Assembly (NCBI RefSeq): GCF_048593235.1
Contig: NC_133619.1
Span: 501,669,644 to 501,733,643 of the forward strand
Direction of reading: 5' to 3'
Origin: Sminthopsis crassicaudata
Lineage: Eukaryota
DNA length: 64,000 nt
Shown in pieces: positions 56,317-59,097 of the stretch. The translations under genes and the position numbers were made by a program. The notes under the pieces were generated by a model that was not told the origin of the DNA, ran no database searches, and worked only from the letters and a program-made list of their open reading frames with translations. Every line of letters starts with the position of its first letter. The first letter of the stretch is position 1.

Positions 56317-56704
56317 CTGAAAGAAAAAAAAACATGTCAGACTTTGTATTTGAACCATGTTGGCTCTTGTTCTTGTCACATGCCCTTCCTATCTGAGTAC
56401 AAATCTTTAATCTGTTTTCATGTATATTCAGTGTGACACCCCCAGGGCAGGAGTTGCACTAGAGATTTTCTGAACAGCTTTATATTTTGAGAATATAAAG
56501 ATCTGTGTTCTGATTTATAGAGAGCCAGTAAGTAAGCAGGATTTTTACCCAGAAAAGTATCATTTGACTCCTCGACACAGGAAAAGTCAAAAGAAAAACC
56601 AAAAATTAAGCCCAATTGTTTAGGGTTGCTAAATCCTATCCTTACATTCAATACTTCTAGTATGATCTCTGACCCTTGTGACTAAATACTGACTAAATAC
56701 TTAC

Positions 56705-56779
56705 TACGCTTTCCCAGGAGTCTTCGCTTCATTGGCGCTGATGATGAACAGAGGAAAGAGTATAGAGAAGAGGCAGCCA
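56705..56779 (-). CDS. EI24: EI24 exon 10
   Basis: 75 nt, (S)[24 protein letters not shown](Y), donor TA|GTAAGT. Confidence 0.95.
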
Positions 56780-57043
56780 CTATAGAAAGATAAAAGAAAG
56801 TTGAAATGGCATCACAGAAAACCTAACTTCTAAGTGGGGTGATATGGGAAATCAAAAGGACCCCAAAGGATATCACTCTCACATCTTCCAATTCCTGTGA
56901 GAATCTATAAATTTACTATGGAACAGGTTAGCCAGATACTTTCTAGAAGTGGGACAAAGCTCAAATGATTCTACTGGATATGTACAGACCAAATCCCAGC
57001 TTTTATCCTTACAACCTACCCCAAATTCTTTAATTCAGATTAC

Positions 57044-57155
57044 CTGATGATGTAAGAAGACTGCATTGCTGTGAGGAAGGCCAAGGGTAGACCAAATCCA
57101 AAGTAGTAAGGCCAGTTCCTTTCAATGTTGGATAATCGCTGATGCATTTCAATTC
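57044..57155 (-). CDS. EI24: EI24 exon 9
   Basis: 112 nt, [37 protein letters not shown]. Confidence 0.96.
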
Positions 57156-57533
57156 CTAATAAAACGCAAATTTAAAATACCCCACTGAGTGAGCTCACAC
57201 TACCAGTGAACTCATACTACTATGGGCATTATGATTTTCATTATAATGTTATTTACTATAAGAAATTTCTACTGTAAAACCACCATTGGAGAGAATGTGA
57301 TTACAAAGATTAAATTCATTTAGGAGAGTGTCCTGAAAAACAATCTGGAAGAACAAGTCATTTTGATACTCCCAGACCAGGATTTCTTAAATATTTATCT
57401 ATTTTCCTTTTATTGGCTTTATCTTCTCAGATACCTTACAGATATTCCCTAAATTTCTGTTTACTATTCTCTTCCATTTACTCATTCTCTCTTGGCAACT
57501 TCATTTACTCTTAGGGCTTGAACTATTAAATTT

Positions 57534-57875
57534 CTATTAATTTTATAATTATAATTTTTTTGACAGTACATATGCATGGGTAATTTTTTTATATTATCCC
57601 TTGTACTCACTTCTTTTCCGAATTTTCCCCTCCCTCCCTCTATCCTCTCCCCTAGATGACAGGAAATCCCATACATGTTAAATGTGTTACAGTATATCCT
57701 AGATACAATATATGTGTGTAAAACCGAATTTCCTGTTGCACAGTAAGAATTGGATTCAGAAGGTATAAGTAACCTGGGTAGAAAGACAATAGTGCAAATA
57801 GTTTACACTCAAATTTCCAGTGTTCCTTCTCTGGGTGTAGCTGATTCTGTCCATCATTGATCAACTGGAACTGAA
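57534..57875 (-). mobile_element. Young 5'-truncated L1 (342 bp) with perfect 16-bp TSD
   Basis: ttgaactattaaattt at 57518-57533 and 57876-57891. Same orientation as EI24. Confidence 0.9.
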
Positions 57876-58991
57876 TTGAACTATTAAATTTATGTAAATT
57901 ATTTTCTTCATCCCTACTTTCTCTTTTAAGCTCCAGAACTTTGTTTCTAACTGCCTATAGGCATTTCTTAAAACTAAATGTCTACACCACTGGCACAAAC
58001 ATTTCCAAAAGTGAATTTATTATTTTTCTAAAATTAATTAGGATTAGAACAAGGAGATGAGATATATAGAGAGAAATGGTAACTGAATTCATGGGAATTG
58101 ATGAGATCAGCAAGTAAGACAGTACAGAGGGAACACAAGACCCAGGGTAGAGCTTTAGCAGGTCTACAGTAGACGTATATGTGACAAGGATGAAGAACCA
58201 GAAAAAGAATGAAAAGAATCAGAGATGTCAAGTCAAAAGCATTTATTAAATGTTTAGTATATGCTAGATACTGTCCTAAGCACTACAGATACAAAGAAAG
58301 GCAATGTGGACTAAGAAATAGGCCATTAGTCTTGGCAATTAAGGGATGATTAGAGTTGAACTGAACCTTGAAACAAATGGGCTAACATGCTAATTAGAAG
58401 ACCAAACCAGGACTAAAACAGGCAGCACAGAGATATTGAACAAGATTCTTGAGCTATGCTACAAGAAGCTACTAAAATATTACTGGCTTCCCATTGAAAG
58501 ATATGGGGAGCTACTGGTGCTGTGAGTCTGGTATAGACCACTAATACTAGATTTGAAAAAAGGCAAATTGGGGAATGGAGGACTTTTGGGGGGGCGGGGA
58601 GGTGAACTGTTCTAGTCAGTCAAATTTAAATACACAGGTGGACTGTTTAGAATTTGATGTCTGGTAGTAAGTTCTTTTGATGCATTTTAAATTCCCATCT
58701 GATATATATTGACTGCGTATTGAACGCAGAAATACCAAATATAACAAACTGCATTATGCCAGATATCACAGTGAAATCAATATGAATTGTTTTTTTTTAA
58801 ATCACCACTTTAAATTTTAAATCACTCATTTTAGAGAGTGCAGTTTCAGATAATGAGGACAAAAATGTAGGCCCCTACAATGAGTTTAGTTGAGAAAGAG
58901 GAAACAGGTAGCATAAACAAATGTAGGTCTGTTTGTAGGAAGCAGGGAAGGAGTTCATAGGTTAGAAAAAAACACAGAAATTAAACATCTT

Positions 58992-59097
58992 CTCTTTCCT
59001 CTGTTCATCATCAGAGCCAATGAAGCGAAGACTCCTGGGAAAGTGTACTAAGTATTTAGTTAGTATTTGGTCACTAGGGTCAGAGATCAAACTAGAA
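58992..59097 (+). repeat. EI24: Inverted duplicate of EI24 exon 10 3' part plus intron 10 start (source 56655-56760)
   Basis: Ungapped manual alignment to the reverse complement of 56655-56760 gives 99/106 identical. Confidence 0.95.

What the first reader, a model, noticed from the sequence alone, without database searches (positions are those of the whole stretch)
56655..59097. Inverted copy of EI24 exon 10 and its splice donor inside intron 8: a built-in intragenic antisense arm
Seen: 58992-59097 (+) matches the reverse complement of 56655-56760 at 99/106 with no gaps. It covers the last 56 nt of exon 10 (2 mismatches), the donor (GTAAGT changed to CTAAGT in the copy) and 50 nt of intron 10 (5 mismatches in total, counting the donor change). 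Because it includes intron sequence, it is not a processed-mRNA copy. It sits in an L2-like remnant with no clear TSD. Inference: in the EI24 pre-mRNA the copy is transcribed first and could pair with exon 10 and its 5' splice site, giving a stem of about 106 bp with a 2.2-kb loop that holds exon 9. Three of the seven mismatches would be A:C pairs. Established: long near-perfect intramolecular duplexes are ADAR substrates (exon/ECS pairing) and can mask splice sites. Possible outcomes are A-to-I recoding in [12 protein letters not shown], in-frame skipping of exon 10 (75 nt, loss of a hydrophobic segment), or retention of the 388-nt intron 10. This would be a lineage-specific control switch on an ER/autophagy protein.
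Basis: partly seen in the sequence, partly recalled or inferred. Interest (0 to 1): 0.8.

Follow-up and report, generated by a model that had tools for sequence, protein, structure and literature searches.

The report
Inverted EI24 exon-10 fragment in intron 8
A marsupial EI24 gene carries, inside intron 8, a real 106-base inverted copy of the end of exon 10 and its splice donor that could fold back on the exon in the RNA, but it looks like slowly decaying duplication debris and no effect on editing or splicing could be tested.

Summary
Bases 58992-59097 are the reverse complement of 56655-56760 at 99/106 with no gaps (blastn E about 5e-33), and this is the only such pair at this locus. EI24 lies on the minus strand. 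The source arm is the last 56 nt of exon 10, the GT donor and 50 nt of intron 10. The copy lies in intron 8, 1003 nt after exon 8 and 1836 nt before exon 9. On paper the pre-mRNA stem is very strong: -172 kcal/mol, and all 99 pairs form in the minimum-energy fold of a 2751-nt piece.

The copy has sharp ends, no poly(A) and no target-site duplication, so it is a DNA-level insertion. Its seven differences look like neutral decay. Both exonic ones are changes in the copy and alter the encoded residue, one is CpG to TpG, and one destroys the copied donor.

No orthologous marsupial intron 8 could be fetched. The ADAR or splicing "switch" is therefore plausible but unshown. Exon-9 skipping is annotated in eutherians too, though whether they lack such a copy was not checked. 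Earlier notes report similar exon-fragment copies elsewhere in this genome. The likeliest reading is a near-neutral micro-duplication that creates a latent dsRNA.

The parts
56655..56760 (-). Source arm (3' arm in the pre-mRNA): the last 56 nt of EI24 exon 10, the GT donor and the first 50 nt of intron 10
58992..59097 (+). Inverted copy (5' arm in the pre-mRNA). It reads exon-sense on the + strand, so it is antisense to exon 10 in the minus-strand transcript. The copied donor is changed from GTAAGT to CTAAGT
56705..56779 (-). EI24 exon 10 (75 nt), acceptor ...tttctatag|TGG, donor GTA|gtaagt
   Evidence: matches the devil retrocopy
57044..57155 (-). EI24 exon 9 (112 nt), inside the 2231-nt loop between the arms
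57156..60100 (-). Intron 8 (2945 nt), which hosts the copy
60101..60212 (-). EI24 exon 8 (112 nt)
56317..56704 (-). Intron 10 (388 nt). Its first 50 nt belong to the source arm
56163..56316 (-). Coding part of exon 11 (last exon)

Best explanation
This is a small inverted intragenic duplication made at the DNA level. A 106-bp piece spanning the exon 10/intron 10 junction was copied in reverse orientation into intron 8. The route was either a templated insertion during break repair or replication template switching, or capture of a fragment by end joining. From seven differences the event is very roughly 10-45 million years old. Since then the copy has decayed like unconstrained DNA. As a by-product, every EI24 pre-mRNA carries two arms that can form a 99/106 duplex over a 2.2-kb loop holding exon 9. 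I infer that this duplex forms in only a fraction of nascent transcripts, because removal of intron 8 and U1 binding at the strong exon 10 donor compete with it. In those transcripts it probably attracts promiscuous, low-level ADAR editing. I also infer that it is not a regulatory switch and that most mRNA is spliced and coded normally. Shown: the repeat, its anatomy, the fold energetics and the decay pattern. Inferred: the origin mechanism, the age, partial duplex formation, low-level editing and the lack of a dedicated function.
For: The repeat is real and unique at this locus, with sharp ends. It contains 50 nt of intron and has no poly(A) tail and no flanking direct repeat (read), so it is not a retroposed mRNA. 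Both exonic differences are changes in the copy: AGC to AGA (Ser to Arg) and GCG to GTG (Ala to Val, a CpG to TpG change). Wombat, tammar, sugar glider and eutherian EI24 keep [14 protein letters not shown]. The devil retrocopy differs from exon 10 at 1/77 but from the copy at 3/57. Divergence is 3.6% in the exonic part, where only the copy drifts, and 10% in the intronic part, where both drift. That is the ratio neutral decay predicts. None of the mismatches is compensated or a wobble. The window holds two more two-copy short local repeats (60 nt and 46 nt). Earlier notes list similar exon-fragment copies in STX5, TOMM40L, TBC1D8, DDX39B and NOTCH4 in the same genome (unchecked leads). Together these point to a general mutational process. 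The 6.6% divergence argues against an assembly artefact. DNA-type runs from two samples and studies hold 0.88-0.93 of the sampled words of 56100-59200. Fourteen RNA-type runs hold 0.45 of the words of 55813-57200. I calculate 0.443 for spliced, unedited exons 9+10+11 and 0.409 without exon 10. Templated insertions and short-range template switches are established mutational processes (PMC8421209, PMC7954356).
Against: The duplex is so stable that at equilibrium it should always form: -171.7 kcal/mol, and forbidding long-range pairs costs 123 kcal/mol. A 100-bp near-perfect dsRNA is a classical ADAR substrate. In human catalogues, structures over active splice sites are depleted and looped-out exons are less included (PMC8052449). 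A measurable effect is therefore quite possible. No junction microhomology was seen, so the template-switch version of the origin is not specifically supported. The neutral-decay argument rests on only 7 differences. The word-share argument is indirect: which words were sampled is unknown, and contigs hide minority variants. No RNA reads and no orthologues were examined.
Confidence: 0.6

Rival explanations
1. The copy acts as a new editing-site complementary sequence. The intron 8 copy pairs with exon 10 in most nascent transcripts, and ADAR deaminates several of the 14 exonic adenosines in the duplex. Twelve of these changes would be non-synonymous, for example I to V, S to G, N to D/S, K to E/R, T to A and Y to C. 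The result would be recoding of the conserved [14 protein letters not shown] segment in this lineage.
For: The duplex is 99/106 at -171.7 kcal/mol and dominates the minimum-energy fold. The adenosines and their codon effects are listed. Pairing between an exon and intronic complementary sequence is how site-selective editing works, and distant intronic duplexes can induce editing (PMC3479170, PMC1920255). A-to-I sites are enriched in long-range complementary regions (PMC8052449).
Against: The target is one of the most conserved parts of the protein: it is identical in wombat, tammar, sugar glider and eutherians. Promiscuous recoding there would probably be harmful. The copy shows no sign of constraint. 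The word shares of mRNA-type runs fit an unedited exon 10. All exonic adenosines pair with U, and none sits opposite C, which is the favoured context.
Confidence: 0.12
2. The copy modulates splicing. The stem masks the exon 10 donor and loops out exon 9. This would raise exon 9 and/or exon 10 skipping, retention of intron 10 (which stops the frame at once at GCG TAG), or back-splicing around exon 9.
For: The donor lies in the middle of the duplex, at offset 56-57 of 106, and exon 9 lies in the loop. In human data looped-out exons are less included and structures obstruct splice sites (PMC8052449; also PMC2724269, PMC7797038, PMC3948165). An exon-9-skipped 262-aa isoform exists in many mammals, so exon 9 is already skippable.
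Against: The same exon-9-skipped isoform is annotated in many eutherians, including human isoform 4; if those genes lack such a copy, which was not checked here, skipping does not need it. The exon 10 donor has a perfect GTAAGT and its acceptor has a good pyrimidine tract. mRNA-type runs hold the share expected when all three exons are present. No junction counts could be made.
Confidence: 0.15
3. The copy is an assembly artefact and is not present in the animal's genome.
For: Short inverted copies can arise from chimeric reads.
Against: An artefactual duplicate would be identical to its source. This one differs at 7/106 in a pattern typical of evolution: CpG decay, and fewer changes in the part where the partner is constrained. 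DNA-type runs of two samples, and further runs of a third study, hold 75-93% of the sampled words of the 3.1-kb stretch containing both arms.
Confidence: 0.03
4. The fold-back is a hairpin-RNA or endo-siRNA precursor. Unspliced EI24 RNA would be diced into small RNAs that silence EI24, as with Drosophila hpRNAs and with plant MIRNA genes born by inverted duplication of their targets.
For: The geometry is that of the inverted-duplication model (PMC3237417, PMC10317233).
Against: One arm lies in an intron that is removed in the nucleus, so the hairpin exists only in pre-mRNA. From general knowledge, mammalian somatic Dicer handles long dsRNA poorly. No small-RNA data were examined.
Confidence: 0.03

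Closest known systems
Exon/ECS duplexes that direct ADAR editing (GRIA2 Q/R and R/G sites; the Gabra3 I/M site with its distant intronic duplex)
   Same: An intronic sequence complementary to a coding exon in the same pre-mRNA, so any editing must precede splicing. The exon-intron pairing overlaps a 5' splice site, as at GRIA2 R/G (PMC1920255, PMC3479170).
   Different: Known ECS duplexes are short, imperfect, conserved and site-selective. This one is 106 bp and nearly perfect, so it would be promiscuous rather than selective. It lies 2.2 kb away and upstream of the exon. It was clearly born by duplicating the exon itself, shows no constraint, and has no demonstrated editing.
Inverted-repeat transposon pairs (for example inverted Alu pairs) that form hyper-edited intronic or UTR dsRNA
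   Same: Two inverted copies a few kb apart in one transcript, forming a long near-perfect duplex.
   Different: The arms are not transposon copies. There are only two copies in the window, and one arm is a constitutive coding exon with its donor.
Long-range pre-mRNA structures that loop out exons or mask splice sites (human PCCR catalogue, ATE1, TERT, Drosophila cases)
   Same: Complementary boxes bracket an exon and cover a splice site (PMC8052449, PMC7797038, PMC3948165, PMC2724269).
   Different: Those are defined by conservation, covariation or mutational tests. Here there is no conservation evidence and no splicing readout.
Templated insertions and short-range template switches (MMBIR/FoSTeS-type micro-duplications)
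   Same: A short segment copied from a few kb away, inverted, without TSD or poly(A) (PMC8421209, PMC7954356).
   Different: No microhomology is recognisable at either junction. Later substitutions may have erased it, or the fragment may have been captured by end joining.

Membership tests
Exon/ECS ADAR editing substrate | Intramolecular duplex between a coding exon and intronic sequence of the same pre-mRNA | tested here: met
   99/106 complementarity and -171.7 kcal/mol; all 99 pairs form in the MFE of a 2751-nt pre-mRNA piece
Exon/ECS ADAR editing substrate | A-to-G differences between RNA and DNA at exonic adenosines | not testable with these tools
All runs are kept as contigs only
Exon/ECS ADAR editing substrate | Conservation or compensatory evolution of the ECS | tested here: inconclusive
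   No orthologous intron 8 could be fetched. Within the sequence, the 7 mismatches are uncompensated and fit neutral decay
Exon/ECS ADAR editing substrate | Imperfect short duplex with bulges and loops that gives site selectivity | tested here: not met
   The duplex is continuous over 106 bp with 7 isolated mismatches and perfect runs of up to 28 bp
Inverted-repeat transposon dsRNA | Arms are copies of a repeated element | tested here: not met
   Only two copies in 64 kb, and one of them is exon 10 itself
Long-range splicing-regulatory RNA structure | Complementary boxes bracket an exon or cover a splice site | tested here: met
   The exon 10 donor lies inside the duplex and exon 9 lies in the loop
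Long-range splicing-regulatory RNA structure | Splicing changes when the pairing is present or absent | not testable with these tools
   No junction counts and no species comparison
Templated insertion / template-switch micro-duplication | Insert is a copy of nearby sequence, in either orientation, without TSD or poly(A) | tested here: met
   The source is 2.2 kb away and the copy is inverted. The ends are sharp and no flanking direct repeat or A-tail is present
Templated insertion / template-switch micro-duplication | Microhomology at the junctions | tested here: inconclusive
   The bases next to both junctions do not match between the source and target flanks. At 6.6% divergence, short microhomology could have been lost
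Processed (mRNA-derived) retrocopy | Lacks introns; has poly(A) and TSD | tested here: not met
   It contains 50 nt of intron 10 contiguous with exon 10 and has no poly(A) or TSD. A true processed EI24 retrocopy, the devil locus L001, looks quite different

The most novel reading that the evidence does not exclude
This could be an editing-complementary or splice-masking element caught shortly after its birth by inverted duplication of the exon it targets. In this dasyurid lineage the intron 8 copy would pair with exon 10 in a large share of EI24 pre-mRNAs. It would then either recode the conserved [14 protein letters not shown] segment by A-to-I editing or shift exon 9/10 splicing. That would be a documented example of how exon/ECS pairs originate.
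Probability: 0.12. Interest if true: 0.7.

Novelty: new member of a known kind. Interest (0 to 1): 0.35.

Why it matters
If the duplex forms and is edited or alters splicing, this would be a clean natural experiment on two points. The first is how exon-complementary sequences arise: in one mutational step, by inverted micro-duplication. The second is how much long, perfect dsRNA over a constitutive splice donor a housekeeping ER/autophagy gene can tolerate. If the duplex does nothing, as I think more likely, that is still useful. It would show that kinetic competition from co-transcriptional splicing, U1 binding and helicases can neutralise a -170 kcal/mol intragenic stem, and that such exon-fragment copies are ordinary duplication debris in this genome.

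Tried and rejected

2. Orthologous loci.
- Wombat, tammar and Gracilinanus entries returned no DNA because the files were too large.
- Sugar glider isoform X2 is not on record.
- The devil entry (L001) is a processed EI24 retrocopy, not the parent gene.
- I first read its protein model as a retrocopy of an exon-9-skipped mRNA. I rejected that when blastn showed exon 9 present in L001.
- The cluster listing did not expose a dasyurid full-length EI24.

3. Exact look-ups of window ORFs. The exon 9 ORF found only a compact-genome species with 80% exon identity. A 71-aa ORF in intron 8 found nothing.

4. A metagenome scan for the exon 10/copy 30-mer gave 0 hits.

5. Extension of homology beyond the arms: none was found.

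6. Transposon context ('L2-like'). There is no repeat library, and Pfam found nothing in the flanking ORF pieces. There is no TSD; the shared AGAAATT heptamers lie 17 and 24 nt from the ends and are not adjacent to them.

7. Literature. No paper links EI24 to RNA editing, and none was found that shows an ECS born by exon duplication.

Full report
OBSERVATION

The inverted repeat is exactly as described. The repeat finder reports a single inverted pair in 55000-61000: arms 56655-56760 and 58992-59097, 106 nt, with 2231 nt between them. A base-by-base comparison gives 99/106 with no gaps. Two mismatches fall in the 56 exonic bases. One is at the first base of the donor (G to C). Four more fall in the next 49 intronic bases. 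blastn gives E = 6e-33 and 4e-33 within the window, and there is no third copy. Smith-Waterman alignment of the sequences flanking both arms scores within the range of shuffled controls, so both ends of the duplication are sharp.

GENE ANATOMY

Open segments on the minus strand spell EI24. The splice sites can be read directly.
- Exon 8: 60101-60212.
- Intron 8: 57156-60100.
- Exon 9: 57044-57155 (112 nt).
- Exon 10: 56705-56779 (75 nt), with donor GTA|GTAAGT.
- Intron 10: 56317-56704 (388 nt).
- Exon 11, coding part: 56163-56316.

The spliced translation reads ...[38 protein letters not shown].... This matches wombat, tammar and sugar glider EI24. A processed EI24 retrocopy from the Tasmanian devil (L001) aligns exon by exon at about 97% and confirms the exon boundaries. 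STT3A follows on the same strand at about 21.9-46.4 kb, which from my own knowledge is the order these two genes have in human. I could not check that, but it fits the marsupial-type residues and the close match to the devil.

WHAT THE COPY IS

The copy carries 50 nt of intron 10 contiguous with exon 10. It has no poly(A) tail and no flanking target-site duplication. It is therefore not a retroposed mRNA but a DNA-level inverted insertion of a local fragment. No microhomology is visible at either junction. Break-repair capture and replication template switching (PMC8421209, PMC7954356) both remain possible.

Both exonic differences are derived in the copy. The changes are AGC to AGA and GCG to GTG, the second a CpG to TpG change. 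All orthologues keep [14 protein letters not shown]. The devil retrocopy differs from exon 10 at 1/77 but from the copy at 3/57.

Divergence is 3.6% where only the copy is free to drift and 10% where both arms drift. None of the seven mismatches is compensated or even a wobble. This is the pattern of neutral decay. Pooling the sites gives about 4.5% per lineage, with a Poisson range of 1.8-9%. With mammalian neutral rates recalled from general knowledge, that is roughly 10-45 Myr. The same divergence makes an assembly artefact very unlikely. In addition, DNA-type runs of two samples and studies hold 0.88-0.93 of the sampled words of 56100-59200.

WHAT IT COULD DO

In the minus-strand pre-mRNA the copy is transcribed first and is antisense to the 3' half of exon 10, its 5' splice site and 50 nt of intron 10. 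The two arms pair at -171.7 kcal/mol, against -19 and -16 kcal/mol for each arm folded alone. In the minimum-energy fold of a 2751-nt stretch all 99 complementary positions pair in register, and forbidding pairs that span more than 1500 nt costs 123 kcal/mol.

All three of those adenosines are intronic. Fourteen exonic adenosines lie in the duplex, and twelve would change the amino acid if edited. Exon 9 sits in the loop. Published human catalogues show three relevant trends: looped-out exons are less included, structures over active splice sites are depleted, and A-to-I sites are enriched in such structures (PMC8052449).

WHAT COULD NOT BE TESTED

All listed runs are stored as contigs anyway.

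The indirect evidence available is weak. Fourteen RNA-type runs each hold 0.45 of the sampled words of 55813-57200. I calculate 0.443 for fully spliced, unedited exons 9, 10 and 11, and 0.409 if the exon 10 words were missing. This suggests that the major mRNA is normal.

Orthologous intron 8 sequences could not be obtained. Wombat, tammar and Gracilinanus files were too large, the sugar glider isoform is not on record, and the devil hit is a retrocopy.

CONTEXT THAT LOWERS THE PRIOR FOR A DEDICATED FUNCTION

- The exon-9-skipped 262-aa isoform (...YRWFNK followed by a frame-shifted tail) is annotated in many eutherians, including human isoform 4. If those genes lack such a copy, which I did not check, exon 9 skipping does not need the copy.
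- The window holds two further short two-copy local repeats, one of them also in EI24 introns.
- Earlier notes report comparable inverted or displaced exon fragments in STX5, TOMM40L, TBC1D8, DDX39B and NOTCH4 of the same genome. Two of these were followed up and judged to be inert debris (these are unchecked leads, not evidence).
- The copy shows no constraint.

VERDICT

The structural inference is confirmed in silico. The functional inference is open.

My best estimate, at 0.6, is a near-neutral inverted micro-duplication that creates a latent dsRNA. At most a minority of nascent transcripts would fold and be edited at a low level. The reason is kinetic: intron 8's acceptor emerges only about 500 nt before the second arm is complete, and splicing, U1 binding at a perfect GTAAGT donor and RNA helicases compete with the fold. 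This kinetic argument rests on general knowledge and was not tested.

The rivals are a real shift in splicing (0.15), real exon 10 recoding (0.12), an assembly artefact (0.03) and an endo-siRNA hairpin (0.03).

The feature belongs to a known kind, the long-range inverted-repeat dsRNA within a pre-mRNA. Its unusual point is that one arm is a constitutive coding exon and its donor. No literature link between EI24 and editing was found.

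Noticed in passing
window 56551-56654 (-): A weak end-to-end match to U6atac snRNA (Rfam RF00619, 20.1 bits against a gathering score of 33; E = 0.068 in 4.5 kb and 0.006 in 401 nt). 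It is probably an old snRNA pseudogene in intron 10. Its 5' end abuts the end of the duplicated segment (56655) exactly. Homology to the copy does not resume beyond it.
   Followed up: partly
window 61574-61631 and 62230-62289 (+): A 60-nt direct repeat at 97% identity, with only two copies in the window and unrelated flanks. The copies lie in two different EI24 introns (introns 5 and 4). This is a second short local duplication in the same gene.
   Followed up: partly
window 31552-31597 and 32383-32428 (+): A 46-nt two-copy direct repeat at 93% identity, 0.8 kb apart, within the STT3A gene region. It is not low-complexity sequence.
   Followed up: no
L001:3186-5129 (Sarcophilus harrisii, GCA_048593225.1 CM109174.1): A processed EI24 retrocopy with exons 4-11 and the 3' UTR contiguous, about 97% identical to the window's exons. 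It is annotated as a 'LOW QUALITY PROTEIN' whose model splices out the exon 9 part. The Gracilinanus agilis EI24-like entry (267 aa in an 804-nt gene range) also looks intronless.
   Followed up: partly
window 56679-56706 (and the same bases in the copy, about 59046-59073): An 11-nt tandem duplication (TGACTAAATAC, 2.5 units on the + strand) at the very start of intron 10, overlapping the donor. It is present in both arms, so it is older than the inverted duplication.
   Followed up: no
proteins P0146, P0152, P0294 (many eutherians): An EI24 isoform that skips exon 9 (262 aa, with a frame-shifted tail ending ...SPWWSS) is annotated across eutherians, including human isoform 4. The stop lies in the last exon, so it may escape nonsense-mediated decay.
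   Followed up: partly
window 55684-55812: A run of 129 N inside the EI24 3' UTR.
   Followed up: no
window 21900-46400 (-) and 48000-50000: STT3A coding exons lie on the minus strand, with the start codon near 46360 and the last coding exon near 21970. A G+C-rich island at 48-50 kb is presumably its promoter. A second G+C-rich stretch lies at 1-2000.
   Followed up: no
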